Shown piece by piece: positions 31,845 to 56,895 of a stretch of DNA of 64,000 nucleotides (the first letter of the stretch is position 1; each line of letters begins with the position of its first letter). The translations under genes and the position numbers were made by a program. Source of the DNA: Styela clava (lineage: Eukaryota); the NCBI RefSeq assembly GCF_964204865.1, contig NC_135263.1:5704001-5768000 (forward strand), given 5' to 3'. Below the pieces are notes generated by a model. It worked only from the letters and a program-made list of their open reading frames with translations. It was not told the DNA's origin and searched no databases.

Positions 31845-33110
31845 TCACATTTTCAACTTTCTTTCTCTATATAAGTAGGAATCATAGTAAAAAACTGCAA
31901 TAGACAATGAACCGAGAAATATAGAAAAAGCATTTGGAGCTGAGAAAGATAATTCTTGTAGAATGCCATTAGCCAGAGGCGCTCCAAACCTGGCCACGGA
32001 TAACACTGATGATCCAAGGCCTTGTATGTGTCCAATGTCACAACTTTCTGAATATTTCACAGTCAAAACCACACCACAAACTCGAAGTACTGAGGTACCC
32101 ATAGTAAGGGTTGTCATGGCTACTAGAATCACAGATATTTTCGAAGAAATTAAAAATAGAATAAAAGATAGCAAAACTAAACAACTTGCATGCATTTGCA
32201 ATTTCTCTTCATGGCCTTTGTAATATGCTAAATTCGACACAGTGCCAACTAAAAACCCAAAAAATAACCCAAGAAACCCATTATACGAGACAATATATCC
32301 AACTGTAGTTGAGGCTAAATCAGGGTGATAATGGGTTAACCATAAAACAAACGTTGAACGAAACATCAAAACTGGCAAGGCAAGCAAAAAACGAGAAGCA
32401 AAAACCCCTCTCTGGAAGCGTTTGAGGTCATCAGTTATATTTTCTACATTTGCTGTGTTTTCGGTAACACCGTTTTCGTGATTAAATCCATTTTTGTGTG
32501 ATTTTTCTGTTGGCATGGGTTTATATAACTCATGATTTGGATAAAATCTTAAAATTGACACAACTAAAAAATTTAGTAAAAAAAGAGAAGCACAAATCAT
32601 ATAACTAATGTAGAGTCCATAAGTATGGCCAAAATTCGCAACCAAATGTCCATGAACAGTGGGTCCAATAATAAATCCAATGCTTGCAATTGCATTAAAA
32701 CTTCCTATTGCCTGATTTTTGTTATGACCGGACTCTTCAATTAAGCAACATCTGCATAAATCTTGTGTGTGCTTAAAAATACCAGGAATTATCCTTAGCA
32801 ATGCCAAGCTGACCAATGATGAAACAAAAAATCCAGAAAAGAGATATCCAGTAGAAGAAATTATTAGGCAAGCTGAAATGGCATTTAAACGTCCTCTGGA
32901 ATCGCTCCATTTTCCAACCAAAGGACTTGAAAACAATTGTAGTGCTCCATAAATAGATGTTATGGCCCCTGTCAGGGTCGAAGAAGCTCCAAACGATTTT
33001 ATATGAACGGGAAACGCTGGAACGACGAGACTTACGGCAAGCATGTCTAAAAATCCAATCAAATATAGAAGGAAATGCCGAGCCTGTAGGTTTCTATTTT
33101 TCTTCGTCAT
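31845..33110 (-). CDS. MFSD9: MFS transporter MFSD9, intronless, 421 aa
   Basis: LYLIGFLDMLAVSLVVP...YGALQLFSSPLVGKWSDSRGR (MFS motif A), GIFKHT, FNAIASIGFIIGP; about 12 hydrophobic segments. Confidence 0.9.
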   Translation of the reverse strand: MTKKNRNLQARHFLLYLIGFLDMLAVSLVVPAFPVHIKSFGASSTLTGAITSIYGALQLFSSPLVGKWSDSRGRLNAISACLIISSTGYLFSGFFVSSLVSLALLRIIPGIFKHTQDLCRCCLIEESGHNKNQAIGSFNAIASIGFIIGPTVHGHLVANFGHTYGLYISYMICASLFLLNFLVVSILRFYPNHELYKPMPTEKSHKNGFNHENGVTENTANVENITDDLKRFQRGVFASRFLLALPVLMFRSTFVLWLTHYHPDLASTTVGYIVSYNGFLGLFFGFLVGTVSNLAYYKGHEEKLQMHASCLVLLSFILFLISSKISVILVAMTTLTMGTSVLRVCGVVLTVKYSESCDIGHIQGLGSSVLSVARFGAPLANGILQELSFSAPNAFSIFLGSLSIAVFYYDSYLYRERKLKM

Positions 33111-33527: not shown

Positions 33528-34262
33528 GCTGATATATCCGATGTCAGATCTTCACTTTTGTTAGATTACCGTGCAAGATTAAAGATTATACAATACAATT
33601 TTATTTTGATCTTTCGTCTACAACGTGATAACACAGAACGCAAAATAAAAGCACAGACAAGGGCGACGAAAAGATCGGGAAAATGGACAAAACCTCGAGA
33701 AAGGTTTATAGCAAACGCTGCAAGCGTTTGTGCCCATTTACCCTCACTCACACAGATTCATTCAAATAGCTCATAAGTCTGTAAGTGAGCGTGTGCTTTG
33801 TTCACGACGGGGATATCGCTCATGTCAGCGTGTGTACTCCTCAAAATCCTTACAGAGTTGAAGAAGTCATTTAATGCAGCAATGCCTGTTTTCCCCATTT
33901 TGCCATCAATATTGGGATGCTTTGTGGAAGATTGAATCAATCTTATTTAGGTACCTATTGCAGTATTGTTCTGCGAATTAACTTCCTGAATCAGTAAATA
34001 CACATACAGACACACATAGCTGACATAGAGCTATTGATCACCTCCAGACCTTACAGAATGTTTAAGAAATACGGTATGTTAAACTTCTCCACTACTACAA
34101 AAAAGCAAAATGTTAACATTACAGAATTATGTTCCTTGTGTGGACTTGATAGTGTTTAATTTTTTTTAAGATGCTGCTTGAGTACAATGTAAAATCATGT
34201 CTATAAATTTGATTTCTTTTTCTCAACTTTTAGCCCATAACGTAAAATTAGGATATAAAACA

Positions 34263-34742
34263 ATGGCAGGAAATCCAGCTAGATCTGCACAACTCTCTCA
34301 TACAACGCAAAATCTACTAAAATCATACAAAAGCAGATTACAGGATGACATCCGAACCATGTATGAGAACTTCAACGAAATTATACGATCTGCAAAAATA
34401 GCAACAGATGAAAAACAACTCGTACAAAAAGAATCGCAAGGCTATTTTGACGTTTACCAAATGAAAGTACGAGCTGCAAATATTGTTCGCGCAGGAGAAT
34501 CATTACTAAAACTCATATCAGATCTCAAAACTTTTGTCATTTTGAACGATTTCCCAAGTATAAATGAACAATTAAATCAACAGAATCAAGCATTGAAAAA
34601 CACTGGTGATCTTTTACAACAGAAGATTATTGAAATGAGAGATGAATTTTCTTCTGCTATGATAGATCTTGAAAATGAATATTATAATTCATTAAGAATT
34701 CCAGTTCGTAAGCCCACAAATCACAGCTCTTCTATGCAATGA
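34263..34742 (+). CDS. MED22: Mediator subunit 22 (Surf5), single coding exon, 159 aa
   Basis: LLKSYKSRLQDDI..ENFNEII..AKI...YQMKVRAANIVRAGESLLKLISDLKTFVILNDFPSINE...LENEYY. Start placed at 34263, after the acceptor TTTTAG (34232-34233). Confidence 0.93.
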   Translation: MAGNPARSAQLSHTTQNLLKSYKSRLQDDIRTMYENFNEIIRSAKIATDEKQLVQKESQGYFDVYQMKVRAANIVRAGESLLKLISDLKTFVILNDFPSINEQLNQQNQALKNTGDLLQQKIIEMRDEFSSAMIDLENEYYNSLRIPVRKPTNHSSSMQ

Positions 34743-35834: not shown

Positions 35835-39966
<4,132 letters not shown>

Positions 39967-40734: not shown

Positions 40735-41154
40735 CTTCGTCTAATAAGTCCGGCTGGCGAACAAAAACAACGAAATAATTTTCATAATTGGTCAGAAACA
40801 CCGGGCGTCCATTGGCTAAAAATTCATTTGTTGAAAACGAATACTGATTGTTTTAGGCCGAAGATTTAATAATAATGATACAATATTAAAAAATTATATA
40901 AACAAAAAAACGTTTAGGTACCTATATCCAACAATTTTTTGTCATGAAGTCCATTCATTTCACGTAAAATTGATCTATTATTATTGATATATATTTGAAA
41001 TAACGATGTACACCTGAAACGTAATTTATAAAAAATTTACCTTGTGAGCGTCAATTTTCATTCTCACTTGAGGGTAGCATTTCTGTAATTTCGATGCAGT
41101 CGTTAATAAAGCACTTGATGCCAATAGCACAAGAAAGTACAAACTTAAAACCAT
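40735..41154 (-). pseudogene. Truncated lipocalin paralogue (exon 1, part of exon 4, decayed exon 5)
   Basis: Exon 1 (41041-41154, MVLSLYFLVLLASSALLTTASKLQKCYPQVRMKIDAHK) is intact. Exons 2-3 are missing. Exon 4 remnant lies at ~40922-40970. The exon 5 remnant (~40735-40828) has its acceptor AG changed to AA and has lost the donor and the Cys. About 370 bp of upstream DNA is also homologous to 44120-44510. Confidence 0.85.
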
Positions 41155-41843
41155 ATTGGTATAAAATCTTCTTCGTACTGGTACTTTGTACACTTTTATT
41201 CTGTAGTGGTATAAGTGAGAATCAGCGCTTCCTATTTTTCTACGCCTCACTTAACATCTAAAATAAGTTAATTGACTTTGGAAAATACATAATTTCCTGT
41301 TTTCATATCTTTACGAACACTAATACCTAATTCAACTAGATCGGCTATAAACTTCGAAGAAATGATAAAACGAACAAAACACGCTCATACGCATCGTGCC
41401 TACTCACACAGCTAGGATGCAAATGCAGAGTTCATTGACTTTAGTGTCTGAGGTGCTCCAATACGTAATTCTTTGTGGTACAATATCTTCGGAAGTGGTG
41501 CCTAAGAGGCATGGTTTCATGTTTTCTCGTGGCCTAACCTGGTACACGCCCTACTAGGGGGCCGAATAAGCTATTGGGAGATCTAATTCTTTTTCAGTGT
41601 AATTTGAAATTATCGTGGGTCTTTGTAATTATCTTCTTCTTTTTTTAACTTACTAATGTTTTAATCATCTTGCCTACTTTCGTACTATTAAAGAATGTGG
41701 TGATAATTAACAAAATTTCTTGTGAATCTGTTAGTTTATTGATATATGGATTGGTACTAGTAAAAATTGAACCCCGTTTTTAATGTAATTAAGTTGGATC
41801 TGCAAAAACTCAAAAGTTTCGTCTCCATATTGTTATGTTTTAT

Positions 41844-44113
41844 TTACGCTTGACTCCAGTTTGTTTCCGAACACGTTGAAGCTTGAAAGTTGGCTGATAT
41901 TCCGACGTCATGAAGAACATTGATGAATGCCGCAACCTGTGACAAAGTAGGATTCGGACTGGGAAAATATCCCCAGATCATTCGATGTGCTGAAATATTT
42001 AAAAGATGGTACGGTTATTTTGTATATACCTATTCACAGACAACAAATTATTTTAATGCTATAAGCTAATATTTTATACCTTCATCAGCTAATAAGTTCG
42101 GCGGGCAGTCAAAAACGGCAAAATAATTTTCATAATCGGTCAGAAACGTGGGGTATCCCTCTGCTAAATACTCTTCTGTGAAAAACGAATACTGTATATT
42201 GCAGGTCAGTCATTTGAAAGAATGTATAATATATGATTAATAAAAAAAATTGAAAAAAAATACGATAACTTACCGATATCCAACAATACTTTGTCATGGA
42301 GTCCATTCATTTCACGATTAATCGCGGGTTGATCATTTTCTACAAAGAAGAGATTCGCATCATATGCGTAACCGTTGAGGGGTCATGCAAAATTTTTTAA
42401 ATGCTAGTTTGCGACGTTTGTTCTATTCTTGAACGATTTACTAAAACTGGATGTAATCTAGATTGCTATCAATAATCCTTTCACCAAATGAACCAAGATA
42501 GATGAGAATATGCAGTTATATAAATTGGATAACTTCGACACCTAAGTAAGTCCGAAGTGAGATTCTTTAGTATATTGTTAGATATTAGTGGCTGCCTCTA
42601 TTTGGCTTTGTTCGGGGCAAAAGCCCTCTCCCCCCAAAATATATATATAAATAAAATTTTGCGCTGGCCTTGGTTGGCTCAATGTGTAAATATATAACGT
42701 CATATTGAAACGATACAATAGCACAGTCTTACACAATTTGCGATTTAATGCAAACTAACATACCATTATCTGATTTGGTCAAATAATAAATTCCGTTCTC
42801 ACGTAAGCTAAAGCAAAGCCCAAGCTGAACAAATCTAGAATGAACGACGACATTATTAAATTATATTTACCAACAATAACATGATTATATGTATAGTTTA
42901 GAATTTAGATATTTCATTGAGTTTTGATGTACATCATCAATTATATTATTTATTTTAAATCTGAAATGAAATGTGAAAACAGCATTTTTTTTAAGAATCA
43001 ATCAATAAGACCGTTTTACCTGACACCTCGTTCTTTCACCAGCACCCCAAACCCGGATTCTGTAGCAGTAAAGTTGGTTAATCTAGCGCAAGGGATTATG
43101 GAGGCTACAGCATCATTTGTCTGTAGTCCGGTATACCACGTGGTTTTAGAAAGCTTCAAAGAAGAAAAGATTAATTTATATTAAATTAAATGACACGAAA
43201 TAGATCTATGAATCGTTGTTGTTGTTCTTCTTCTTGTTGATGTTATATTTGTGATGTGAAAATTTCGCTTTTCCCATTAATTACTAAATCAAATAGTGAA
43301 TATTTCCAGCGTTTAAAAAATTGTGGTTGTCAAAAATTTCTGTGGACTTTGTGGGATTCGTATTTTACTTTGAAGTTTTGTATGTTGACGTCATCAACAT
43401 TGAAAATTGCGCAAAGTTTGGCGGTTCCACGATCGTGAATCAGCGATATTGAGCTTAGCAAGTTCGGGAGTTTTTCGAAAATGCAGGCTACCCATAGCAA
43501 AACATATCACAGTTGTAACTCATTTGCTATATCGTTTCACATTGAGACAGGTCGACGCATGAATCATCATCGCTACAGGAACTGGAAAAGCGAGGACAGT
43601 TTGTGTACCGCCACTAAGAAGTCACGGTAGCAGCTCATTTAGGATATATATAGTTTTGTGGGTAAAAAAATCGTTTTGGTACTCGTGTACATGTATTTGA
43701 GCATTACTTTCATGTTCTTGATCAATTGTTATGAGTGCAGTTCATTGACGATTGCTTTAAAATGTGCTATTCCGTTGTCCTGGCCTACACTGTTTATTAC
43801 AAACAATATTCGAAATATCAAGTATTGTTGATAGGTTGGTAGTATTACGAGTGATAGTTTGGCACCCACAGCGTAACAAAGATTCTGATTTGAAATTTAG
43901 AAACATAATAGGTACATATAGTAAAAAGAGTTTTTTATCAAACAATCGTATAACTGAAATACCGATTCATACCACAAACGTTATTTATAACAAATTTACC
44001 TTGTGAGCGTCAATTTCCATTCTCACTTGAGGATAGCATTTCTGTAATTCCGATGCTGTCGATAATAAAGCATTTGATGCCAATAGCACAAGAAAGAACA
44101 AAATTAAAACCAT
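41844..44113 (-). CDS. Secreted lipocalin (ApoD-like), 6 exons, 208 aa
   Basis: Exons 44000-44113, 43020-43153, 42764-42834, 42274-42339, 42080-42175 and 41844-41989 splice in frame with intron phases 0,2,1,1,1, the lipocalin pattern. Signal peptide; SCR1-like CYPQVRMEIDAHKLSKTTWY; SCR2 LTDYENYFAVFDC; C-terminal Cys (ASTCSETNW); AATAAA overlaps the stop. Confidence 0.85.
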
Positions 44114-46580
44114 AATGGTTATTATAGAATCTTTTTCGTAGCGGTACTTTGTACACTTTTAGGCTATAGTAAAAGTATAAGTAAGAATCAGCGTGTTCTA
44201 TTTTCTACGTCTTGCTTCAAAACTAAAATAAGGTAATTGACTTTGGAAAAGTTAAATACATCAAAACGTATTTGCATATCTTTAGGAATCCAGACGTAAT
44301 TTAACTAAATCTGCTATGAACTTTGGAGAAATAGTAAAACCAACAAAACACATTTGAATACATCGTACCTCTTCACCCAGCCATGATGCAATTGCAAATG
44401 CAAAGTTTATTGATTTCAGTGTCTAAAGTACTCCAATGTGTAGTAGTTGTTCGTGATACGATTCCAATGTCTTATGAGGTAGCGTCTAACTCTAAGATGT
44501 ACGGTTTCTCATGTCACAACAAAAGTATATGGCAGAGTTGCCCGCTTGAGCAATGAAGTCAAATTGAATTTTACTCTACATTACATTTGGTATTGAAGGC
44601 AATATTAATATCATTTTTACAAATTTGTTGTTATACGAATATTGTCTCATCTCTTGACCAAACCCGGATTTGACTATCATAGTATTCAAATATTTTTTAA
44701 ATAGCACACTTCCGGCAATTTATAGAAAACGATTAAGGTTAATGTTGCCCGTATATAAATATTCAATTTTGTTACGTAATATATCATTATATGGCAGTGG
44801 TTCTCAACCGGGGGCCGATGGCCCCCTAAGGGGGCCACGAAGCAGTTCAAGAGGAGCCACGACACAAGACCAATAATAGATCATAAAGCAACTTAGTTTG
44901 CATACTTTTATTTTAAAATAAAATCTCCCGTTCAGGCGTTCACCGCAGTTTCATTACATGAATAGGTTATTTGCGATTTCAGGGTGAATTCACTTTCCCA
45001 TACGTGAATTGTTTCAACATATTGCCCACAATACGAAAATGGAACGACAGTCGCATTGGCGTTGGCTTCACCAAAGTAAATTGAGATGACAGAGTGAATG
45101 TAGCTATGAAGTGGCATTTCGTATTCTTAGTGCAACGGTACGACTTAACCGGAATACCGGTAGGTGCTCGCCACTAATACAGTCTAGTAATACTGTAATA
45201 ATTAGTTCAGAAGGTCCAATGTGCTGCAAAGACACACAAATAGGTTCGAAGTTCACGATGCAAACGAAGAGACTATCAAAATAGTGTAAAATCCACGCTT
45301 AAAGCAGATAAAATAAGAGCGACAAAATACGGTCCTTACCCAAAGCGTATATATAATACGCTTCTCGACCTCACCTATGTGCCAAATTTGTTTATATTCC
45401 CTTGTGATTTTATGTTGGGTTTTTATTCAAACTAAAAATCTTTTTTTTTCTTCTCCTTGTTCGGATATTCGCTTCTAAAATAAATATTAAAAAAATGTGA
45501 ATTTGTAAAAAGATGTGAAAATTATACTCTCTTTTACAGAATTTTAAACAAATCAAGTTAAATCAGCCAGGGAAACAAGCAGACAGAAGATACTTCAGCA
45601 AAACGCAAATTGAAAAAATACAGTGTTGACAAAGTGTCAATTCTACAAAAATCAGACAAAGAAAGTCTGGTTCAAAGTATGTGAACAAGTTTAGACAATC
45701 CATATTTTTTCCAGTGAAAAGATTTTGCAAAAAGAAATCTAGATTTGAAACAATCATATTTATATTTGCATTTGGGAGATGCACACAGTCTTGCAATACT
45801 CCACGTAAAATATATTTTATGGTGATAAGAAAACAGCGCCATCTTGAGTACATAAATAAATTTTATTGGTGTTTGTTCAGAATACCTCGCATTGTTAGGC
45901 GTTCGCAGTTTACAAAACACAGTTTTATACCTGATAATGCCAAGTATGCGCTTTGAAAAGATTATTAACGTATACGTCATTTGAATCAAAACTTATTGAC
46001 GAAGTGTTAATAGTTGCACAGAAAATTGCATTCCCTACATGAGGAATAAATTTGAGATGTGATTTTATCAATAAATATGTTAAAAATGCATGATAAATAA
46101 AACTTTTTAGTATCTTGAGCGTATTATTTTCTATTTTCTAATTCATACGAGCTCTGGAATAACGAGATGAAATAGTGAAAAAAAAGATCTGAATTTTAGG
46201 AAAATATTTGGAATTGTGTAAGCAAGCGACAGCGCAAGGAAATAAACGAATTATACCGATCACTATAATCAAGGTAGGTTGCTTTGTGGATAATATGATT
46301 ATTATACTAAAGTATAAAGTAATACTGCATTTCTGAGTTATTCATATATATTAATTATTAATATATATATATAGCAAAATGAGCCAAATAAAAATAGTAA
46401 AAACGATAGGAGCCAAAACTATCTGTAACTGCAGCACAAAGATTTTTTTTCGCGTGCTCAACTCGAGGGTGTGATGTAGGTTTGGCTCCATTATCAGTCA
46501 TCTTTTAAAATAACAATCTTGACTTTACAGCATTAATATAGATTGACAATACTTTCGATTGTACACGAATTGTAAACAAT

Positions 46581-46720
46581 GGAAATTCCCAAATCGTTCT
46601 TAAAGGAGATTAAATCTTCAGATTGCGGTTTACTCAATTTTCTACGTAAAAGTTGGCTACCATGGTTGCCATATTCCAATAAAAATTAAAAAACGCTTAT
46701 GGCAAATCGTATTTATAAAG
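46581..46720 (+). promoter_or_regulatory. Promoter of cystine-knot gene A: NF-kB-type site and TATA box
   Basis: GGAAATTCCC (reverse complement GGGAATTTCC, canonical kB site) at 46581-46590; TATAAA at ~46714-46719; ATG at 46766. Confidence 0.6.
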
Positions 46721-46765
46721 CTTCCGTGGTAAATATCACCATTTTGCTTTTGAGCTGCCGATGAA

Positions 46766-47992
46766 ATGAAACGGTTTATTCATTTTCTTGTCTGGCTGTG
46801 TGTTGGCCCAGCCTTCTGCTCGGCGGGAGGTCCACCAAGACGGGATAAAGCGCCACCACCACCACCACCAGAATGCCAACTTAAAAGACCACCGTAAGTG
46901 AACTGCGATTGCTTATATTTTTTAAGCGTAGTTATATTTTTATAATATTGTAATTATAATTTCTTGGTAATCTAATTCACCCATATCCGTTTCAATGTAA
47001 GTCAAATTGTCATTAATACGAATTCGTTTATATATATATAGAAAAGTCGTTTAAAAAAAAATTAAACAAGAGGTCCTGTCATATAATTATTTTTGATTCA
47101 TTTCACCTTTTTCTAAATATTTTCTATAAATTATTTTAGATTGAACAATCCGGATCCCTGTCCCATGCATGTCTATTGGGAACACAGATGTTTGCCTCCG
47201 AAACCATGTTTATTTACAATTAAGAAAGGGATTGTAAGAGAAAAAGGCGTGAAACATTACGTGAAACTGTCTCTTCCAGTAACACACTTATCTCGAGAAT
47301 GCAAGTATGTGGAATATCTGATTTATTGAATGAAATTTCAAAAGTTGCATGTTAGTAAATATTCTTCGATGTTACAATTTTAATAAGACAGCTGAAAAAT
47401 CTACGTTACATATTTAAAGTATAATTTCACATCACACAAATTCGTTACACTCGCAGAAAATTAAATTGTATTAATCTAATTTTATTTTCAGAAAATATGG
47501 CAAAATATGCAGTCCTGGAAAAAAATATTGCACATGCCAGCACAAGGGAGAGTGGGTTAAGATAAAGGCTTGGGTACTTTGGAAAAAGAACAATTTTCAT
47601 ATTTCTGCTCTCAAAAAAGTTGAAGCGCTAGTAAGTTAATGACAGGGGCAAAGCCTGACAAGATTGATTAAAATTATCCTGGCAGATATTGTAATGGCTT
47701 CTGTTTTCAAAATAGAGTTTGCTTGCAACATTGGTCTTAAAAATGGCTATTCAATGTATCACTAATAAATACTTCGCCATGTAATAAATCACTGTCAACG
47801 GAAACCGAATTCGATTGCAACAGAAGCCACTTATCATACATGTGATATAATACTAAGATTTAATACTTTATCTGAGACTTATGAGACTTATCTGAGCTTA
47901 TCCATTCACATTTCATTTCTTTTAATATTATTTTATAGGTCCCGGGTGGATGTATGTGTGCAAGGAGAAACATAGTATCTTTCGTACCATAA
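46766..47992 (+). CDS. Secreted cystine-knot-like protein A, 4 exons, 161 aa
   Basis: Exons 46766-46893, 47140-47304, 47492-47630 and 47939-47992 (phases 2,2,0) give MKRFIHFLVWLCVGPAFCSAGGPPRRDKAPPPPPPECQLKRPPLNNPDPCPMHVYWEHRCLPPKPCLFTIKKGIVREKGVKHYVKLSLPVTHLSRECKKYGKICSPGKKYCTCQHKGEWVKIKAWVLWKKNNFHISALKKVEALVPGGCMCARRNIVSFVP*. AATAAA at ~48045. Confidence 0.88.
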
Positions 47993-48823
47993 TATCTTTT
48001 TTATCGTAAATCATATTATGGAAAAAGCGATTTATCAAGTTGACAATAAATAAATTGCTATCGATGCATTTTTATTATTTATGCCATTCATGTGGATCAG
48101 TATTCAATTTGGGGAATTTCGCACCATTTTATTAGAAATGATGAAGAGTTCATATCAGTAAAGTTATCACATCACGACTGCGACGATATTTCCGTGATAT
48201 ATGATTTATTCAGACAGCTGAAACTTAAATACAATTCAAAACTAGATACAGAATTCAAAGTATAAATGCAACATGTCGTAGAAACGAAGGACATGAATAA
48301 CGAATAGCGTATTGAGTTATCCTTATCATTTTGAAATTGCGCGGTTAATAGTTAGGGTTCTCCACTGAACAAATCATCAACCCAAACAACCCCCTCTCAA
48401 GATCAAATTTGCCGAACTTGGAAGATTACTAATCTTCTGAATACATAGAAGCTGAGATGTGCACTTGTTAAAAAAAAAAACGGAAAAAAAAATTTAGATC
48501 ACAACATTAATAATTAAATATATATAGGGGGTAAAACGTTTTAAATATAACTAAAATTGCCAATGTGTTTAGCTATGAATGGGACACAAGCCATGCACCC
48601 TTTTGTGGAGTAAAGAATTGTATAAAGCGTCTAGTTTTTCAGATGAAAAAAATTAATAAAGTTGAAAATAAAGACTAGCACTGAATAAACTTCTTTTATG
48701 TAAAATCATCAATAGAGCAATCATCCAATGCTTGGGTACTTCTTCTTCAAGAAAGAGTTCCCTAAGAGAGAGTAGTTTGTGCGTTAGACTAATGTGTGGG
48801 GTGGTGCCGAGTCAGCTAGAGTC

Positions 48824-49119
48824 CAGTGGTTCCCAACCTTTTTTAAAACACTTAAATTTTGTCAAAAAATAAATTTCGTAAAATCTCGCACCGAGGATAT
48901 GCTCAAATACTAAAAGGCATGTAGTGCTTCTATTGCCGCAAAATTAAATTATAAATACAAAAAAAAATCTACAATATTATTAAGCAACATTTCAGTATCA
49001 AATACAAAATAAACAAAAAAATCCACTAGAAAATAAAATCACCTTTATGTTTAGATTGAAAAACAAAACAATAACGAGCAATCCAGTTTTCGGTCGCGAC
49101 CCGAAGGTTCGGGAAAATG
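48824..49119. mobile_element. Degenerate Charlie-type MITE between the two cystine-knot genes
   Basis: Left end CAGTGGTTCCCAACCTT; decayed right end CGCGACCCGAAGGTTCGGGAAAATG; no clean TSD. Confidence 0.5.
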
Positions 49120-50431
49120 AATTAGTCCATTTTACTCTACTAGGGTGATTATGCGCATGTGGGTTTCTTGACTCATGTTATTCTTTTCGTTTAATTATTC
49201 AAATAACCAAACTTAGCTTACAAAAATTCATATTGAACAAATAGGAAATAATTTTCCCTAATCCCCAGCCGAAGACGTGGGTTTCAATTAAATGACGACA
49301 TACCTAAAGACATCATTTGATATTAAACTGGTTAAAAAGTTGTGCACAGTTTTCGACTACAGCGCCGTCAAAATAGCATTTTGGCGTACTCTTATTTCTT
49401 TACGCAGCTGATAGCTTATTTAAAATTCATAATATGTTAGGATAAGTTTAATAGGTTTAAATTGGCCATAAACTGTGGCATTCAAAAATAATGACTATTG
49501 GTGAACTTTTCATCATTTTGTAATGACACATAACGATCTATCTATATATACAAGCAATGTATACACAGCAACAAAAGTGGCAGAGATAAATACAGTTTTA
49601 GCGAAATACAGAATATAAAAACGATAGCTTTTGTCTGCATTTGCTTTGTAAAAAATACAAGAAAATTTGAAATCAGGAAATTATTATTTTAAGCATACAT
49701 TTTTAGGTGAAAATAACGCATGAGTTTTATAATGAGGAATATTTTTGAACGTAGATACGTAGATAAAGACATAGTTTGTTTGATGCTAATCAATAGAAAC
49801 TTCCTTCTGGATATATATTGCATATTTAAGCAGTACAGGAAAATATATTTGCAAGCATCATCTTTATTTAAATAATAGTCATGGTTTCAGGAAATCTTAA
49901 AATGCTAAAAAAAATGATCTTATTGTGCGAAAATGGCGAAACTAAAGAATAAAATGGTGGAACGATATCGGCTTTAAAAGAATAACAGTATTAGTGAAAT
50001 TTTGGGTTTGCGCAAGGCAGTTCTTGGATCAGCGAACTAGTTCTTAATTTTTGTTTTGTCCCTGTTCTGAAATCTGTTGATAGCGAGTTTTACAAAAAAA
50101 AAAAATGTTTTCAAAATTTCGAATCCCACCACTCACTGACGGGGATATCATCAGAAATACTATTGTGACAAAACAAGTTGAATGGGCGAAATATACATGG
50201 CTGTGCTTTTAAAGTTTTTCGTTATTTGAATACGGTTAACACGGATAATTTACCAAATTACTGTTCTGGTTTTTACCAATACGACCATTATCTAGAATAG
50301 ATAATAAAATAAATGTGTGCCGTATACTGGAGTGAAAAAAATATTTAACTAAAATTATTAAAATCGAAACCGCGTGGCATTTGTTTTAGTTTTAATTTAG
50401 CATGCGTTAACAGCAATGCCGCAAGCAAAGA

Positions 50432-50577
50432 TTCCCGGAATATATTCCTCCGATCAAATGAACGTTGCAGTATTATCGCATGTCAGCAGCAATTGTCATA
50501 ACATTGGAAATTCCCATTCTTCCATTAATTCTACTTATAATACCGCTCCATCTGTAACAAGTACAAGTGTTATAAAG
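50432..50577 (+). promoter_or_regulatory. Promoter of cystine-knot gene B: STAT-type GAS site, NF-kB-type site, TATA
   Basis: TTCCCGGAA at 50432-50440, GGAAATTCCC at 50506-50515, TATAAA at ~50571-50576; ATG at 50706. Confidence 0.6.
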
Positions 50578-50705
50578 ATGTTCCCGAAATTGTTTTTCAG
50601 CCTTTAACAATCGTGACGAAAATAGGTTTTTGTGGTTTTTTAAGAATTTATATAATCTGGGTTATGACTGCCGAAGTCATCAGTTGCTGAATTTGCTGCG
50701 TTACA

Positions 50706-51890
50706 ATGAAATTTGCAGTTTTTTGTATTGTACTTGTTTGTGTGACTGCGGGTTGGTCTGTGCCGCCTGACGAACCCAAAGACGTGCCCCCCCTGCCTGT
50801 TCTTCCGCCGTGCAAACTCAAAAATCCACCGTGAGTATATACTGTCAAAAATATTGGCACCTAATATTTTGTCTTTCTAATATTTATGAATATTTTATAT
50901 TTGTAATGAAATTTTGCTTCAGATGGAAAAATCCAGAACTTTGTAGAGAAAAGAAAAAGTCTAAATGTTCTCCGAGAACTTGCCTCTTTACAATAAAGAA
51001 GGGATACATTTACATAAATCAAAAAAAGGTGGAGGTTAAAGTTACGAAACCGAAAACCATAAAAGTTGTTGAGTGTCGGTAGGTTAAATCCATGTATTGT
51101 GATATTACCTACATATGTGAATGAAGGTAGAGAATAATTCATGAATTGGTAACTCGGTACTTAGGATTGGCCAACGGTATTTCGACATGATTTTATCACT
51201 TCCATTTATGACTGGCCTTATCTGTCAACCTTTTGATAAAGGTTGATCTTGATTTTTACCCAATCCAGGTGTAATTAATCGGACAGAACGAACCGCAGAC
51301 AATTTAGATAAATCTAATGGCAAAAATATTCTACTACTAGAGAAAAGATGGAATTAAATGACTTAAATATGCCGAAAAATGTTTTGATTAATTAATCGAC
51401 ATCGCTATATTATTCGTACAAATATTTGATAATATACGAAAGAGTGCTACTTTATAGAATGTAATTAAATTATTTTTCAAAATATATGAATAAAAATAAT
51501 TACAGGAACTATCTGAATAAATGCAGCAACGAGATTTCCTTCCCATGTAGATGCAAATATATGGGGAAAAGAATCTTTGAAGACTTGTATATCGCAAAGA
51601 AAATTGAAGGAAAATGGAAATCTGTTAAAACTTGGGTTCAAGTCAATGTAAGTCTTGTGAATGTCATCATTTCAATGCAGATTTCGTAACAAATATAAAG
51701 TCCATTAATGGCTTAAGCAGTGCACATTTTGACGCAATTAAAAACAACACAAATATCTAGACAAAATGTAATAACTTCACAAACTTAATATAAATTGATT
51801 AATTTGAATTGTATAACTGAAAATAATATTTCCTTATCATAGATTCCTGGTGGATGCAGATGTGCCGAAGCGAACAGAATTATAACATAG
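50706..51890 (+). CDS. Secreted cystine-knot-like protein B (paralogue of A), 4 exons, 156 aa
   Basis: Exons 50706-50830, 50923-51078, 51506-51647 and 51843-51890 (phases 2,2,0) give MKFAVFCIVLVCVTAGWSVPPDEPKDVPPLPVLPPCKLKNPPWKNPELCREKKKSKCSPRTCLFTIKKGYIYINQKKVEVKVTKPKTIKVVECRNYLNKCSNEISFPCRCKYMGKRIFEDLYIAKKIEGKWKSVKTWVQVNIPGGCRCAEANRIIT*. AATAAA at ~51947 and ~51967. Confidence 0.88.
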
Positions 51891-53198
51891 CGTCATAGAT
51901 GGAGCACCGGACGCACGCAGAGAAAATGTCAAAATGATACGCTTAAAATAAAATTATCTCTGCAGCAATAAAGATTCGTTATTTTTGTTTCAAGCTGAAA
52001 CTGTATCAGTAATTAATTAGAGTTTGATATGTTGCCTATTAAAAACGTTGGATGGGTTTTCGCTTAACATATTCAGCAGAAATCCAGTTTTCTGTTAATT
52101 TGTCGGTAGGTAACGTTGTGCGACGCCTAGCAATAATAAATATAACAAGCTTTAATATTTTCAATATCTACAATTACATCATAATCGATAATATACAATT
52201 TTCATACCAATCTGAATATATTGGATGCCATCTGAAGTACTTCACGAATCACGAATTTGGGGTTTCATGTTGCAGTTGTTAGAAAATGTTGTTTCATAGA
52301 TCGAGTGCTGTTATGCTGGAGAAACCAGGATCACAATAAGCGATGTCAAGTGATCCAACCACCTATTTCAAATTCGTATATTTATTTTCAAAATGCTCTC
52401 CTAATACATTCGCGCACATATATTGTTTAGGATTAGGATTTAGTTCAAGTATAAAAATAGAGGCCAATGCGATGCGTTTCTAATTTCCAAGGTATAAAAT
52501 TTATAGGCAAATTATAGCAAACAAAACACACCAAAAGTATTATATTTATGTAGTGCGCATCGTCACACTCTCTCAAATTATTAGACAGACATAGCCTAAG
52601 ATTTATAGTTATAACCGAATTGAATCCCTCCGTCAAACAAATCAAGTCATTTTTATTTTCTGCGTGTTTAATACAAAGATAAAGTATATTTTGCAATGTT
52701 CTTAAAATTTGATCAAAATGACATTTACAAAAATATATTTCCTCAAATCATATGTTATAATATAGAAAGTCATAATCGTTTTATTAAAATGATGACAGAA
52801 AATATAATCTCACCTGTCGGATAAAAGCTTTCCAGTAACCCTTTCATAAACTTCTGTAGCAATCTTAAAAGCTTAGCAGGATCTTGCCAAGCCCAAAGCG
52901 TATATATAATATAATGTTGTTCTTACCCAGCGACAGCAGAAGCAAGAAGGACGAAGGGTGCGAACTGCAGCCTGTTCACATATGCAGTGGTGGTTGGAGT
53001 CGAGTAACTGAAACCAACTGTCGGGCGAATTAGGGCTCAGACTCCACACACCAATGCATATGCAATAACCAGACAAGAAATATAAATAAAATAATACACA
53101 ATAAAAAATAGTACAACTCCAGTCCCGCCACATTAGCCACTACATAGCATGAAAGCTTCTTCACTGATAGTAGGCCTATGACTTGCCACAACCCATCT

Positions 53199-53340
53199 GG
53201 CTTTTCTGATCTTGTCACCATCAAAACAAAATCTAAAAACCGTTTTGATGTTGACAGTGACATTCGTCTCTGGCTGTATCAAAGACTGTGCCCCATATAA
53301 GAAACCTTGCAAGGCAGTCCCAATTGCAAGATTCCCATTG
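53199..53340 (+). pseudogene. Frameshifted C-terminus of a Buster/Charlie (ZBED5/FAM200-like) hAT transposase
   Basis: GFSDLVTIKTKSKNRFDVDSDIRL / AVSKTVPHIRNLARQSQLQDSH* matches the family dimerisation-domain tail GFS.L..IKTK.RNRL....D.R.ALS...P.I..L....Q.Q.SH. Confidence 0.85.
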
Positions 53341-54152
53341 ATTGTATATATACTAAAAAGCTTGGACTTCTTTTTGTCTCTATATAGTTTGAGTTTTCTT
53401 GGATGGTGAACAGGGGAGCCACGAGTGCAATAAGGCGCCAGAAGGGGGCCACGAGCCATAAAAGATTGGGAACCACTGTTATATGGCATCCATTGGTGAG
53501 GATGTGCAGACGTAGAGTAACGCATAAATCCGTTGCATACACTTATTTACAAGCAGGTAATATTGACGAACAAATTTTGAATGACAGAAACTAAAAAAAT
53601 TATTTACACAACAATAATTACTTAACGCACGCACACACACACACAAACACACAATCGGGAGTGTAAAAAGCGAGACCTAAAATAAATTACTCTGTAAGAA
53701 GAAAAATATACAAACAAATAAAAAAACAATGAATAAATCCTTTTGCCACACCAAATTAATAATATTATGAGGATTGCTGAATTGGATACCGAATTAGTCA
53801 AAAAGAGTTATGTACTGTGGATAGAAAATAAATATTCCTAAAAAAACATCGTCAAGCTGATTTTAATTGGAGTCACCTAATGCCGAATTGCCCAATCCGA
53901 ATTGCCAGGTTGAATGCATGGAGAGGTGGGCTAGACTTGCTTCACTCACCAGATAGAAGAAAAACCTATCCAAATTAACTCCAAATTATTTTAAATACTA
54001 TTATTCAATAAAAGTGCCGGTAATTAAAATTAAGTAAGACACTGTAACACAGCCATGTTGCTGCTTCATCGTTAAGTTTTGTTCAAGATACCCTATTTCA
54101 GTGAATTTATGATAAAATATTTCATACATATTAATTATTATATACGTTTCAG

Positions 54153-54560
54153 AACATCGAATGATCTGGGGATATTTTCCAAGGCCAAATCCAACTTTGT
54201 CACAGGTTGCAGCTTTCATAAGCATACCTCATGACGTCGGAATATCAGTTAAGTTTCATTCTTCGACATGTTCAGAAACAAACTGGAATCATGATTACAT
54301 ATATACTAAACAAAATGAAGGCAAATTTCCGAGTTTTACAGATCACATTTTAATGAAATGGCTTAACAGATAATTTATCTGAGAGATGCCAAGCTATACA
54401 TATATATTATATCAACAAATTATTCGATTCACAAGAAATTTTGTTAATTATGACCACGTTTTTTCTAAGTAGTACAAGGGTAGTTAATAATAAAATCAAT
54501 AATAAGTCAAAAAGAAATAATTGCAACGACCTACGATAATTTAAAATCAGACAGAAACGA
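54153..54560 (+). pseudogene. Orphan lipocalin last exon plus 3' UTR, inverted relative to the other copies
   Basis: TTTCAG|AACATCGAATGATCTGGGGA... encodes HRMIWGYFPRPNPTLSQVAAFISIPHDVGISVKFHSSTCSETNW, paralogous to 41844-41989. Homology continues through the 3' flank (versus reverse complement of ~41580-41840). No upstream exons are nearby. Confidence 0.88.
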
Positions 54561-55575
54561 CTTTATTTATTTACCAATAGCTTATTCGAGATGGGAATTA
54601 AGGCCGCATGCACAGTGAATTTAATTTGAGCTTCAGACTTGCAAGAATTCGGAGCACCGACGCAAAAAACAAAAACAATCAGGTTCCCTCCATGACATGA
54701 CTGCCAACAGGGCCAATACCATATGTGTGGAACACCACCTATCCTATAGCAACAGTGAAAATATAACATAACTTTTTGTTCTTGGAGTGATTATGTCTGC
54801 CGCTTGATCTATAACGGTCTCTTTGTTGTCGCGGCTTGTCACATCCACGGCATCATTTCAGTATGAATCAACGAGAGTCGCAATATCTCACCCTTTGTGA
54901 TGAATGGCCTTTTCCCCACAAATAACAATTATAACATATATATAACAACAAGCCGGAGGCATCGTCGCCTCGGCATTAAACTGGGAGACAACTTTTGCTA
55001 TCTTTTGAAATGCGAATGACATCTGACAAAAATTAAGTTTGAGGAAATCAGCCGGGATATCGCAAAAGGTAATAATTTCTATAACATATGACGATATTTA
55101 AAGATAAAATTAAAACAAAATTACTTTACGACAAGGCAACAAATTTGAGGTCGAATTTTAATTTATTACATGCCAACCAGAGCTTCGGTGAGATCCACAA
55201 TGAAATCTTTTCTGAATGGAAGAGCGAGTGCCTGAGAAAAAGTGATGCGGTGTAAATTCGGGCATAGGCGTTGCCCCCCCCCTAAAAAAAATTTGTTCAA
55301 CGATTTCTTTTAAAGCCATTCTGCGGCATTTACTGTGAAACTCGTAAGTCTTCATAACTTAATTCTTATTCAAAAATCAAGTAATATTTTTCAAATTTCG
55401 GCGTTCTTTGGTTGAAACTCAATGTACATTCCATTTCAGATAACTTAAAGATATGAAGAAGAAAATGCCACAAGCTCGTAACAGCAAATGGATAGTGCAA
55501 TACACTCCCCTTCTGCCATAGACTATTCTCTCCTTATATATCGAGGGAATATCTAGGGATGTCTATAGACTAGAG

Positions 55576-56895
55576 CAGTGTTTCCCAACCCGAGTCCGAG
55601 GTCTCAAATAAGTCCGCGGAGCGTTTGAATGAGTCCGCAACGAGCCAGAAATTCGTGCGAGCCGCAAACGATTTTGCGGAACTTAACATCAGCCAATTTA
55701 CAATTTACGTTGGAATTTACATAAAACATAAAAAGCAAGTTTATTCACATAACATTAATCGAGTCAATAATTACTCGTTACTGAGTAGGGCTGGGCATAT
55801 ATTCGAATATTCAACTATTGGAATAGCAATTTAATATTCGAAAATTTGGTAACAGGTTACGCGACAAGTCACTTGCACTTGTGCGCGTCCCCTAATCAAA
55901 CGATTGGATTTCACAACTCACTCACGAATTTTCGACGAAAACACACAAGTCGGCACACGCGTCGATAGATGGTGGCAACCCGAATTTTCCAAATTGAAAA
56001 GCGGCAATACAAAACGGAGAACACCGTAAGTTTTGTTTTATGATGGACCGCGACCGATTAAAAACGCTTTTTTAGACATTGCAAAACGCAAAATTTTCGG
56101 GTGCTACCGTAGTATGCGTATACCAAGGCATCTTCCCTTAGGGTTGTTTGCTTTACTGCCTCAACATTGATACGCCGTACAGTACTGGTAAGTGTTGTAC
56201 GAACAGCTCAGATTTGTTGAATTCACAAAAATAGGAATCAAAACAAAATATAATCGGGCCCTTTACCACGCATTTTTATGTCCACGGATTGTCATGATAA
56301 TTTCTGAGTAGTATTGCTTTTATTTCGCCAACACAATCACAGATTAAAATGATCAAAATTAAATTAAAAATAAAGCAAGGCGATGAATATTCATTTTTCA
56401 TTTACTAATATATTTTAAATATATTTTTATTAAGTACTGAATCAAGTTGTACTTTCTGGAAATTTATAACAGATAGTGAAATTTTTCTAACAACGATAAC
56501 AAATTTGCAAGATCACAAAAATATGTAAAAAAACTAAATATAATCGGGCAATATAGTCTCACATTATTATGTTCACAGATTGCCGATTGGCGAGAAATGC
56601 TTTCACCTTGTCGTAAGTCGACGCAACCGCGAGTTACCATGAACACAATTAAATTAATATAGAAAGACATTGGATTGAATATTGTGCGACAGAAAGCCAA
56701 TTATACACTAAAAAAGTCGGGTCTTTTTAACGAACGCGTAATTGCTGCGAATTTCCGATTTTGAAATTTGTTACAATTCTGTTGTATTTGATTTTATTGC
56801 TTCTTCGCACAGGTTGCAATAAACGCACTTTGAGTCCGCAAAGATTTTCGCGGGAGAGAAAATAGTCCGCGACCAGAAAAGGTTGGGAAACGCTG
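55576..56895. mobile_element. Non-autonomous Buster/Charlie hAT
   Basis: TIR CAGTGTTTCCCAACC / GGTTGGGAAACGCTG; perfect TSD GACTAGAG (55568-55575, 56896-56903); AGTCCGC subterminal repeats. Confidence 0.93.

What the first reader, a model, noticed from the sequence alone, without database searches (positions are those of the whole stretch)
44795..53478. A hAT DNA transposon carrying two complete cytokine-like genes as cargo
Seen: matching Buster/Charlie TIRs 8.7 kb apart, the same GG(G/A)GCCACGA subterminal motifs at both ends, a perfect TA-centred 8-bp TSD (TTATATGG) and the transposase 3' remnant just inside the right end. Possible decayed 5' remnants lie near 45590-45750 (tentative). Two intact intron-containing genes with their promoters lie where the transposase body should be. 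Established: Pack-MULE/Pack-TIR elements capture host DNA, usually as fragments. Inference: the two paralogues are strongly diverged while the TSD is pristine, so an old tandem pair was probably captured whole. The unit may be mobilisable in trans, giving a mobile immune-gene cassette.
Basis: partly seen in the sequence, partly recalled or inferred. Interest (0 to 1): 0.9.

Follow-up and report, generated by a model that had tools for sequence, protein, structure and literature searches.

The report
Gene pair nested inside hAT MITE
In the sea squirt Styela clava, a 7.5-kb copy of two secreted cysteine-rich protein genes was pasted into a small repeat that already sat inside a short, dead hAT transposon, so it looks like transposon cargo but shows no sign of capture or movement by that transposon.

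Summary
The inverted ends, the 8-bp TTATATGG duplication, the four GGRGCCACGA motifs and the two intact genes are all real. The "transposon" is not an 8.7-kb element that lost its transposase to cargo.

- **Outer layer.** The two ends (44795-45130 and 53133-53478) are the two halves of a ~684-bp non-autonomous hAT element, which is contiguous in other copies.
- **Middle layer.** A ~417-bp TIR-less repeat is inserted there, flanked by a TTAG duplication, and is itself split in two (45131-45342 and 52918-53132).
- **Inner layer.** Between those halves lies a 7.55-kb segment (45361-52895) holding both genes.
- **Parent.** The segment's only other copy is on scaffold C19, in unique DNA without any of these repeats.
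- **Junctions.** They show an 8-11-bp target duplication, CCCA microhomology and a duplicated 16-nt filler. That filler is itself a dispersed genomic motif, and its role is unexplained.

So an old tandem pair was copied whole into a resident element, as in the transposition-independent "gap-filling" Pack-TIRs described in animals (PMC8277862). No second copy with hAT ends was found. No close transposase relative appeared in a search limited to a 40-aa remnant.

Gene 1 (XP_039264625) is under strong purifying selection. Gene 2 evolves fast but keeps all its cysteines. "Cytokine-like" remains only a lead. The scan had already noted these two genes in other notes.

The parts
44787..44794 (.). Left copy of the 8-bp target-site duplication TTATATGG of the hAT MITE
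   Evidence: Read directly; identical to 53479-53486.
44795..45130 (+). Left half of a ~684-bp non-autonomous hAT element ('MITE-1'), with the terminal inverted repeat and two GGRGCCACGA motifs
   Evidence: 94-97% identical to the left halves of other copies, which run straight on into the right half. Motifs.
45127..45130 (.). Left copy of TTAG, duplicated when the second repeat inserted. It belongs to the MITE-1 sequence.
   Evidence: Intact MITE-1 copies read ...TATTCTTAGCCACTAC... with a single TTAG. The window has TTAG on both sides of the insert.
45131..45342 (+). Left half of a ~417-bp dispersed repeat without TIRs ('repeat-2'). It starts TGCAACGGTACGAC and has a constant 3' end CCCGCCACA. 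Probably a retroposon or SINE-like fragment.
   Evidence: Dozens of copies at 95-98% identity, with the two halves adjacent elsewhere.
45332..45342 (.). Left copy of the target duplication made by the 7.55-kb insertion (GTCCTTACCCA). Read as 8 bp perfect or 11 bp with one mismatch.
   Evidence: Intact repeat-2 copies hold this sequence once. The window holds it at 45332-45342 and again at 52918-52928.
45343..45360 (+). Left junction filler AAGCGTATATATAATACG. Its first 16 nt are identical to 52896-52911.
   Evidence: Absent from the C19 copy. 20-nt direct repeat including CCCA. The 16-mer has at least 100 exact copies in the genome.
45361..52895 (+). Duplicated host segment S (7.53 kb) holding both genes and their upstream regions
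   Evidence: Colinear with C19:12505520-12514511. Homology stops at both ends to the base, and no other genomic copy was found.
46766..47992 (+). Gene 1 (LOC120340436, XP_039264625, 161 aa). Exons 46766-46893, 47140-47304, 47492-47630, 47939-47992.
   Evidence: The joined exons translate exactly to P0001. 159 of 161 aa identical to the C19 copy, pS 0.08, pN 0.005.
48817..49072 (+). Old fragment of another hAT-like MITE family (end CAGTGGTTCCCAACC at 48824), between the two genes
   Evidence: Many genomic copies at 74-84% identity. Present with a decayed end in the C19 copy, so it predates the duplication.
50706..51890 (+). Gene 2 (my model, 156 aa). Exons 50706-50830, 50923-51078, 51506-51647, 51843-51890.
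   Evidence: Canonical GT-AG at all introns and an open frame. Intact in C19 too, 66.5% aa identity, dN/dS about 1.2, all cysteines kept. Exons paralogous to gene 1.
52896..52917 (+). Right junction filler AAGCGTATATATAATA plus TAATGT
   Evidence: Absent from C19. Repeats the left filler.
52918..53132 (+). Right half of repeat-2, starting with the second copy of the target duplication (GTTCTTACCCA, 52918-52928)
53133..53478 (+). Right half of MITE-1. It holds the second TTAG (53133-53136), a frameshifted remnant of a hAT transposase C-terminus (about 53178-53340), two GGRGCCACGA motifs and the right TIR.
   Evidence: 94-96% identical to other copies. Remnant: (lead only). Motifs.
53479..53486 (.). 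Right copy of the 8-bp TSD TTATATGG

Best explanation
This is a three-layer nest, not an 8.7-kb cargo-bearing transposon.

Shown:
1. A ~684-bp internally deleted hAT element inserted at this site on scaffold C18 of Styela clava and made the TTATATGG duplication.
2. A ~417-bp TIR-less repeat then inserted near its middle, making a TTAG duplication.
3. A 7.53-kb copy of an already old tandem pair of secreted 10-cysteine protein genes was then inserted into that second repeat.
4. A parental-type locus of the pair lies on scaffold C19.

Inferred: step 3 was a transposition-independent, DNA-level duplicative insertion at a break. The likely process is template switching or gap filling guided by CCCA microhomology, leaving an 8-11-bp target duplication and a duplicated 16-nt filler. 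The hAT ends are bystanders. The genes entered a resident element, and nothing shows that the composite has moved since. Both genes stayed intact after the copy, gene 1 under strong purifying selection and gene 2 under fast, cysteine-preserving change.
For: - **MITE-1 halves.** They are contiguous in other copies, including copies with other flanks (TSD GTCTATAG; also L008), with a single TTAG at the junction.
- **Repeat-2 halves.** They are adjacent in at least 7 other copies, with a single GTCCTTACCCA.
- **The interior.** It matches only C19:12505520-12514511. Homology ends to the base at 45361 and 52895.
- **The C19 flanks.** They are unique DNA and lack both repeats.
- **Direction.** Homology ends exactly at the filler junctions inside the nest. 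That follows by construction if C19 (or a C19-type locus) is the parent. It would be a coincidence at both ends if the window were the parent.
- **Timing.** The window's repeat-2 copy is about 4.7% from its family consensus. Gene 1 pS is about 0.08, and non-coding K2P is 0.04-0.17 against C19. These are roughly compatible with this order of events.
- **Mobility.** No second copy combines hAT ends with cargo.
- **Precedent.** Single-copy Pack-TIRs in animals are mostly hAT-associated and arise in resident elements by gap filling with breakpoint microhomology (PMC8277862).
Against: - The junction filler is not random. (C)CCAAAGCGTATATATAATA is a dispersed genomic motif, with 92 copies at up to 1 mismatch against 0 for the reversed control. 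It sits in direct orientation at both junctions, which hints at an unidentified element or enzyme.
- A target duplication rather than a small deletion is not what simple gap filling predicts.
- The parent is on another scaffold, whereas gap filling shows a bias towards nearby parents (PMC8277862).
- Divergence from C19 is uneven: 0.04-0.08 at the 5' end and above 0.25 at the 3' end. In places it exceeds twice the age estimated for repeat-2, so the direct parent may be a lost or unassembled third copy.
- No population data, related genome or read data could be examined.
Confidence: 0.78

Rival explanations
1. A Buster/Charlie-type hAT lost its transposase body to host DNA during transposition-linked gap repair (Pack-TIR capture), and the resulting 8.7-kb unit is, or was, mobilisable in trans as an immune-gene cassette.
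For: - Consensus-like TIRs, subterminal motifs and a perfect 8-bp TSD bracket the genes.
- A TIR-less parental-type locus exists.
- hAT is the commonest Pack-TIR superfamily in animals (PMC8277862).
Against: - The cargo is not joined to hAT sequence at all. It is joined to the two halves of a different repeat that had itself inserted, with its own TTAG duplication, into an already 684-bp element.
- There is only one copy with these ends plus cargo.
- Most near-identical MITE-1 'copies' share one flank (GTCTATAG). They were amplified passively inside a larger repeat, not by transposition.
- The remnant's closest non-MITE relatives are at most about 85% identical over about 30 aa with short open frames.
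Confidence: 0.05
2. The composite was assembled elsewhere, by the same nested steps, and then moved here once by cut-and-paste hAT transposition. That would explain why no closer donor copy is seen.
For: - The ends are intact and the TSD is perfect.
- Parts of the segment are more diverged from C19 than the age of repeat-2 suggests, so a lost donor site is conceivable.
Against: - No excision footprint or empty donor site could be sought.
- The model still needs the same transposition-independent insertion into the nest.
- A perfect 8-bp TSD is equally expected from the original MITE insertion.
- Nothing requires this extra step.
Confidence: 0.05
3. The 7.55-kb unit was delivered by another mobile system whose terminus is the dispersed motif CCAAAGCGTATATATAATA ('TE-3'). 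This could be an element carrying the gene pair, a read-through transduction, or reverse-transcriptase template switching. In that case the pair is mobile cargo, but of a different and unidentified element.
For: - The motif is a real repeat-family feature: at least 100 exact 16-mers, and 92 20-mers against 0 controls.
- The 5 nt after ...AATA differ among the 12 copies that a degenerate probe recovered, a weak hint that this is an element's outer end.
- It occurs at both junctions in the same orientation.
- The insert has an 8-11-bp target duplication, like retroposon or MULE/hAT-type integration.
Against: - The C19 copy has no such motif and no TSD.
- Apart from an old MITE fragment, the interior matches only C19, so there is no multi-copy family with this body.
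- Both genes keep all introns and the intergenic DNA, which argues against an RNA intermediate.
- Elsewhere the motif mostly occurs singly rather than in pairs.
- Its (TA)n-like palindromic core could simply mark a fragile site and a source of templated filler.
- The family could not be inspected.
Confidence: 0.1
4. Assembly artefact: the 7.5-kb segment was wrongly joined into repeats on C18.
For: Repeats at both junctions are classic mis-join sites, and no reads could be laid.
Against: - Each of the three layers has its own matching target duplication (8 bp, 4 bp, 8-11 bp).
- The segment is 4-25% diverged from the only other copy, so it cannot be a mis-placed C19 read set.
- RefSeq annotates separate genes at both loci.
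Confidence: 0.02

Closest known systems
Single-copy Pack-TIRs of animals formed by transposition-independent gap filling (Tan et al. 2021, PMC8277862)
   Same: - Non-TE host DNA lies between the two ends of a short, degenerate hAT element that was already resident.
- It is single-copy, with a parental copy elsewhere.
- Microhomology (CCCA) and short inserted nucleotides occur at the breakpoints, which lie inside the element rather than at its ends.
   Different: - The fill is far larger than the one captured fragment whose size I read in that paper (291 bp). It holds two complete multi-exon genes with their upstream DNA.
- The parent is on another scaffold.
- The break lay in a second repeat nested in the hAT element.
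- The target shows a duplication rather than a small gap.
- The filler is a dispersed genomic motif repeated at both junctions.
Pack-MULEs of plants, and multicopy Pack-hAT such as Pack-hAT-N8_XT of Xenopus tropicalis (as described in PMC8277862)
   Same: TIRs and a TSD bracket captured host sequence.
   Different: Those elements are amplified to several loci with different TSDs and usually carry gene fragments. Here there is one copy and no evidence of movement, and the cargo is not joined directly to sequence of the TIR element.
Ordinary nested transposon insertions
   Same: Layers 1 and 2 are a plain nested insertion: a repeat inside a hAT MITE, each with its own TSD. Other first-stage notes report nests in hAT MITEs of this genome (unchecked).
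   Different: The innermost layer is not a recognisable transposon. It is a two-copy host segment with functional genes.
Templated-insertion and template-switching repair (FoSTeS/MMBIR, polymerase-theta end joining); from general knowledge and as cited in PMC8277862
   Same: Microhomology at each junction, short templated filler repeated near the junctions, and a duplicative copy of a distant template.
   Different: A 7.5-kb interchromosomal copy with a clean 8-11-bp target duplication is at the large and tidy end of what these pathways are known to give. No direct test was possible.
Cystine-knot cytokines (NGF / Spaetzle / IL-17 / Noggin clan)
   Same: Signal peptide, about 115-140 mature residues, 10 cysteines including two CxC motifs near the C-terminus. 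These families are the nearest ESM Atlas clusters, at 0.85-0.90.
   Different: - No Pfam match even at E of 10 or less.
- No PDB sequence match beyond chance-level spider-toxin knottins.
- No homologue outside Styela clava.
- The AlphaFold model is unusable, pLDDT 37.

Membership tests
hAT superfamily, non-autonomous element (MITE-1) | Short terminal inverted repeats of the hAT type | tested here: met
   CAGTGGTTCTCAACC and CAGTGGTTCCCAATC match at 13 of 15 positions, and other copies carry identical ends. That this is a Buster/Charlie-type end rests on my own knowledge.
hAT superfamily, non-autonomous element (MITE-1) | 8-bp target-site duplication | tested here: met
   TTATATGG on both sides here. 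An independent insertion has GTCTATAG on both sides.
hAT superfamily, non-autonomous element (MITE-1) | Multiple dispersed copies with the same ends | tested here: met
   40 or more scored matches for each end on many scaffolds. Caveat: most of the 94-97% copies are one insertion amplified inside a larger repeat. L008 and the copies at 89-91% identity are separate.
hAT superfamily, non-autonomous element (MITE-1) | Derivation from a hAT transposase gene (remnant of the C-terminal dimerisation domain, PF05699) | tested here: inconclusive
   The 40-aa frame resembles longer open frames elsewhere. The nearest named Atlas cluster carries PF05699, at 0.87. Pfam, PDB and word searches were blank. 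Candidate full-length relatives could not be fetched.
Pack-TIR (as defined in PMC8277862) | Non-TE sequence between the two ends of one TIR element, with a parental copy elsewhere in the genome | tested here: met
   45361-52895 lies between the MITE-1 ends, and the parental-type copy is at C19:12505520-12514511. The cargo is joined to a nested second repeat, not to hAT sequence.
Pack-TIR, mobile (multicopy) class | Two or more copies with the same ends and cargo at different sites with different TSDs | tested here: not met
   The cargo was found only here and at C19, and the C19 copy has no TIRs.
Pack-TIR, gap-filling (single-copy) class | The element was resident before the fill, and the breakpoints show microhomology | tested here: met
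   The nested order is fixed by the split repeat halves and their duplications. CCCA is shared by the target and the parental end at the junctions. Residency in an outgroup species is not testable with these tools.
Cystine-knot cytokine clan (NGF, Spaetzle, IL-17) | Significant match to a family profile (PF00243, PF16077 or PF06083) | tested here: not met
   No Pfam family at E of 10 or less for P0001, P0003 or the single exons.
Cystine-knot cytokine clan (NGF, Spaetzle, IL-17) | Cystine-knot fold | tested here: inconclusive
   The AlphaFold2 single-sequence model has pLDDT 36.9 and is unusable, so no fold search was run. The Atlas feature search puts these families nearest, at 0.85-0.90, with low recognition.
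Non-LTR retroposon or SINE (repeat-2) | Constant 3' end, variable 5' extent, variable TSD, no TIR | tested here: inconclusive
   The 3' end CCCGCCACA is constant and there are no TIRs. Four of 6 copies share extra sequence beyond the 5' end. A 4-bp duplication is seen here (TTAG) and possibly in one other copy (ACAT). No Rfam or tRNA-like match. No reverse-transcriptase partner was sought.

The most novel reading that the evidence does not exclude
The gene pair is bounded on both sides, in the same orientation, by the terminal motif of an undescribed dispersed repeat family (CCAAAGCGTATATATAATA, about 100 or more copies). It was delivered into the nest by that family's machinery, by transduction or as true cargo, with an 8-11-bp target duplication.
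Probability: 0.1. Interest if true: 0.8.

Novelty: new member of a known kind. Interest (0 to 1): 0.4.

Why it matters
The case shows how TIRs, a TSD and genes between them can mimic a cargo-carrying transposon. Halving the ends against the other family copies reveals the true order of events.

As biology, it is an unusually large and complete example of the transposition-independent Pack-TIR route. A whole two-gene unit with its regulatory DNA was duplicated to another chromosome-scale scaffold and both genes stayed intact. One paralogue pair is nearly frozen (dN/dS about 0.06). The other changes at dN/dS about 1.2 while keeping every cysteine.

That makes the locus a tidy natural experiment on the fate of relocated secreted-protein genes in a tunicate. 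The recurring junction motif is a concrete lead to the repair or integration mechanism involved.

Tried and rejected
**Readings rejected**
- **Flank homology between the two loci.** The match of window 55647-55860 to C19 at a similar distance looked like extended synteny. It falls within 55570-56200, a high-copy ~630-bp repeat, so it was rejected.
- **Pairing the right end with the internal end at 48824**. That fragment is old and the C19 copy shares it.
- **S as a transposon with its own ends.** It has no TIRs and no Helitron-type ends. The C19 copy has no TSD and sits in unique DNA.
- **A missing third donor as a necessity.** After aligning without gaps and dating repeat-2, the ages are roughly compatible with a C19-type parent. 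It is kept only as a possibility.

**Searches that came back blank**
- Pfam on ORFs at 45563-45989 and on the single exons.
- Rfam on 44000-54500.
- The PDB sequence search with gene 1 gave only chance-level knottin toxins.
- The AlphaFold2 model of gene 1 had pLDDT 36.9, so no fold search was run.

There is therefore no expression, splice, assembly or presence/absence evidence.
Other copies of the junction motif and candidate full-length hAT relatives could not be read.

The spliced gene 2 protein was never sent to a search or folding tool. Exons were searched singly by reference, and the joined model was used only inside local scripts for translation and dN/dS.


Full report
**Where we are.** The window is C18:5704001-5768000 of a 377-Mb assembly. 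Gene 1 of the finding is RefSeq XP_039264625, 'uncharacterized protein LOC120340436' of the tunicate Styela clava. DNA transposons make up 23.8% of that genome (PMC7540406).

**The observation**
- The left end CAGTGGTTCTCAACC starts at 44795. The right end ends at 53478, and its reverse complement is CAGTGGTTCCCAATC.
- Both ends abut TTATATGG.
- GGRGCCACGA occurs four times in the window, only within these ends, against 0.03 expected. All four are on the + strand, so the motifs are direct rather than inverted between the two ends.
- The ends, the TSD and the motifs are therefore real and not chance.

**What the ends are**
- Searching the genome with each end gave dozens of matches in which left and right ends lie only 570-920 bp apart.
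- BLAST of the window against those loci shows that 44795-45130 and 53133-53478 are the two halves of one ~684-bp element. That element is contiguous elsewhere and has a single TTAG at the joint.
- Most of the 94-97% identical copies share the same flanks and the TSD GTCTATAG. They are one insertion amplified inside a larger repeat on C19, C2, C5, C6 and C9.
- L008 and the copies at 89-91% identity are separate insertions.
- The right half holds a short frameshifted frame that looks like the C-terminal end of a hAT transposase. The evidence is weak and the formal tests were blank.
- The family is thus an internally deleted hAT derivative. The window copy was already short when anything else happened to it.

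**The second layer**
- The first 212 and the last 214 bases of the 8-kb interior are again two halves of one repeat of about 417 bp. They are adjacent in dozens of other loci.
- This repeat has no TIRs and a constant 3' end. In 4 of 6 copies it extends further on the 5' side, which fits a retroposon-like element.
- In the window it is flanked by TTAG on both sides, which intact MITE-1 copies hold once.

**The third layer**
- Intact copies of the second repeat read ...GGTCCTTACCCAGCGACAGC... .
- In the window this is split. GTCCTTACCCA sits on the left (45332-45342) and GTTCTTACCCA on the right (52918-52928). That is an 8-bp perfect or 11-bp imperfect target duplication.
- Between them lie 7.58 kb. 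Of this, 45361-52895 is colinear with C19:12505520-12514511 and with nothing else in the genome, apart from one old MITE fragment at 48817-49072.
- Homology stops to the base at both ends.
- The C19 flanks are unique DNA and hold neither repeat.
- A suspicious downstream match at 55647-55860 falls within 55570-56200, a high-copy repeat.
- The homology ends exactly at the junctions inside the nest. The window copy is therefore the derived one, and C19, or a lost close relative of it, is the parent.

**The junctions**
- Left: target ...CCCA, then AAGCGTATATATAATA plus CG, then the segment.
- Right: segment ...AAGCCCA, then AAGCGTATATATAATA plus TAATGT, then the target.
- CCCA is thus shared by the target and by the parental end, and the same 16 nt follow it at both junctions. 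This gives a 20-nt perfect direct repeat.
- Unexpectedly, the motif is dispersed in the genome. There are at least 100 exact 16-mers, and 92 20-mers at up to one mismatch against none for the reversed control. The preceding base varies. The five following bases differed among the 12 copies that a degenerate probe recovered. That is only a weak hint that an element ends there, because the probe selected for particular continuations.
Its nature is open: the terminus of an unknown repeat, or a fragile TA-rich palindrome used as templated filler.
- One decomposition that explains the target duplication: a very short fragment ending in this motif had already inserted into repeat-2, and the gene segment then entered at that fragile spot. 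This is inference only.

**Timing**
- The window copy of repeat-2 is about 4.7% from its consensus, 1.4% in the left half and 8.3% in the right half.
- Ungapped divergence between the window segment and C19 is K2P 0.04-0.08 over 45361-48360 and 0.10-0.17 over 48361-51860. It is higher at the poorly aligned 3' end.
- Gene 1 has pS of about 0.08.
- This is roughly what a copy made soon after the repeat-2 insertion would show. The unevenness leaves room for later gene conversion of the 5' part, or for an unseen closer donor.

**The genes**
- Gene 1's four exons reproduce XP_039264625 exactly. The C19 paralogue, XP_039257746, differs at 2 of 161 residues, with about 9 synonymous changes, giving dN/dS of about 0.06.
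- Gene 2 is my own model with GT-AG introns throughout, 156 aa. It is intact at both loci and 66.5% identical between them, with dN/dS of about 1.2. Its one indel in the signal-peptide/N-terminal exon is an in-frame 3-nt deletion, and every cysteine is conserved.
- Gene 1 and gene 2 share only 37-44% identity in their exons and no DNA-level similarity.
- No homologue outside Styela clava was found and there is no Pfam family.
- The ESM Atlas puts NGF, Spaetzle and IL-17 clusters nearest, at 0.85-0.90 with low recognition. The AlphaFold model is unusable. 'Cytokine-like' is a lead, not a result.
- The spliced gene 2 protein was not sent to any search or folding tool. Exons were searched one at a time by reference, and the joined step was left out.

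**Mechanism and comparison**
- Tan et al. 2021 (PMC8277862) found 370 Pack-TIRs in 100 animal genomes, 208 of them hAT-associated.
- Nearly all are single-copy. They formed in already resident, degenerate elements by transposition-independent gap filling, with microhomology at the breakpoints and with breakpoints inside the element.
- The present case fits that class: a resident short hAT, a single copy, a parental copy elsewhere, CCCA microhomology, short insertions at the junctions and internal breakpoints.
- It differs in five ways:
  - its size and completeness (7.5 kb, two whole genes);
  - the parent is on another scaffold;
  - the break lay in a nested second repeat;
  - the target shows a duplication;
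  - the junction motif is repeated at both ends.
- It fails the test for the mobile, multicopy class.

**Verdict**
The idea that an old pair was acquired whole also holds.
- Capture by the hAT element in place of its transposase is contradicted by the nest, and mobility has no support.
- The structure is a new, unusually large member of a known kind. One unexplained detail, the junction motif, is worth following.

Noticed in passing
window 45339-45358 and 52892-52911; genome-wide: The 16-20-nt junction motif (C)CCAAAGCGTATATATAATA is a dispersed repeat. There are at least 100 exact 16-mers, and 92 20-mers at up to one mismatch against 0 for the reversed control. The base before it varies. One close inverted pair lies at C4:8447904/8450658, 2.7 kb apart. 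The family is unidentified.
   Followed up: partly
C19:5.41-6.66 Mb, C2:25.15-26.16 Mb, C5:17.65-18.13 Mb (loci L002-L020, L064-L070): The same MITE-1 insertion, with identical flanks and TSD GTCTATAG, recurs many times. On C19 and C2 the spacing is roughly 70-160 kb. A large repeat unit carrying this MITE has been amplified, so most 'copies' of the family are not independent transpositions.
   Followed up: partly
window 50706-51890 versus C19:12512675-12513719: Gene 2 and its C19 paralogue have dN/dS of about 1.2 (66.5% aa identity) with all cysteines and the reading frame kept. Neighbouring gene 1 has dN/dS of about 0.06. The two members of the same duplicated cassette have sharply different fates.
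   Followed up: partly
C19:12507758-12509810 (intron 3 of the C19 copy of gene 1): The C19 copy has a 189-bp tandem duplication and about 1.5 kb of extra DNA in the intron that is 308 bp long in the window. This is either an insertion in C19 or a deletion in the window copy after the duplication.
   Followed up: no
window 48817-49072: Fragment of another hAT-like MITE family (end CAGTGGTTCCCAACC) between the two genes, with many genomic copies at 74-84% identity. The C19 locus shares it in decayed form, so it is older than the duplication.
   Followed up: yes
window 55570-56200: High-copy ~630-bp repeat, 86-96% identical to copies on many scaffolds. It produced a misleading 'syntenic' match to the C19 flank.
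   Followed up: yes
window 10600-11298 (-), 12454-13695 (+), 31845-33110 (-), 34197-34742 (+), 38887-39966 (+): Five long uninterrupted ORFs with clear Pfam domains: V-SNARE, CARD plus caspase (413 aa), MFS transporter (421 aa), Med22, and an SGT1/ecdysoneless-type C-terminal part. The neighbourhood is gene-dense and several of the genes look like single-exon ORFs.
   Followed up: partly
window 43949-44437 versus 40990-41462, and C18:5773047-5774514 just beyond the window: The left flank of the MITE has local paralogous stretches at 73-82% identity a few kb upstream and about 25 kb downstream. This suggests a locally repeated unit around the insertion site.
   Followed up: no
L035 (C16:15374772-15375188 and 15378329-15378745): Two repeat-2 copies 3.56 kb apart have identical flanks on both sides. 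Repeat-2 is embedded there in a larger tandemly repeated unit.
   Followed up: no
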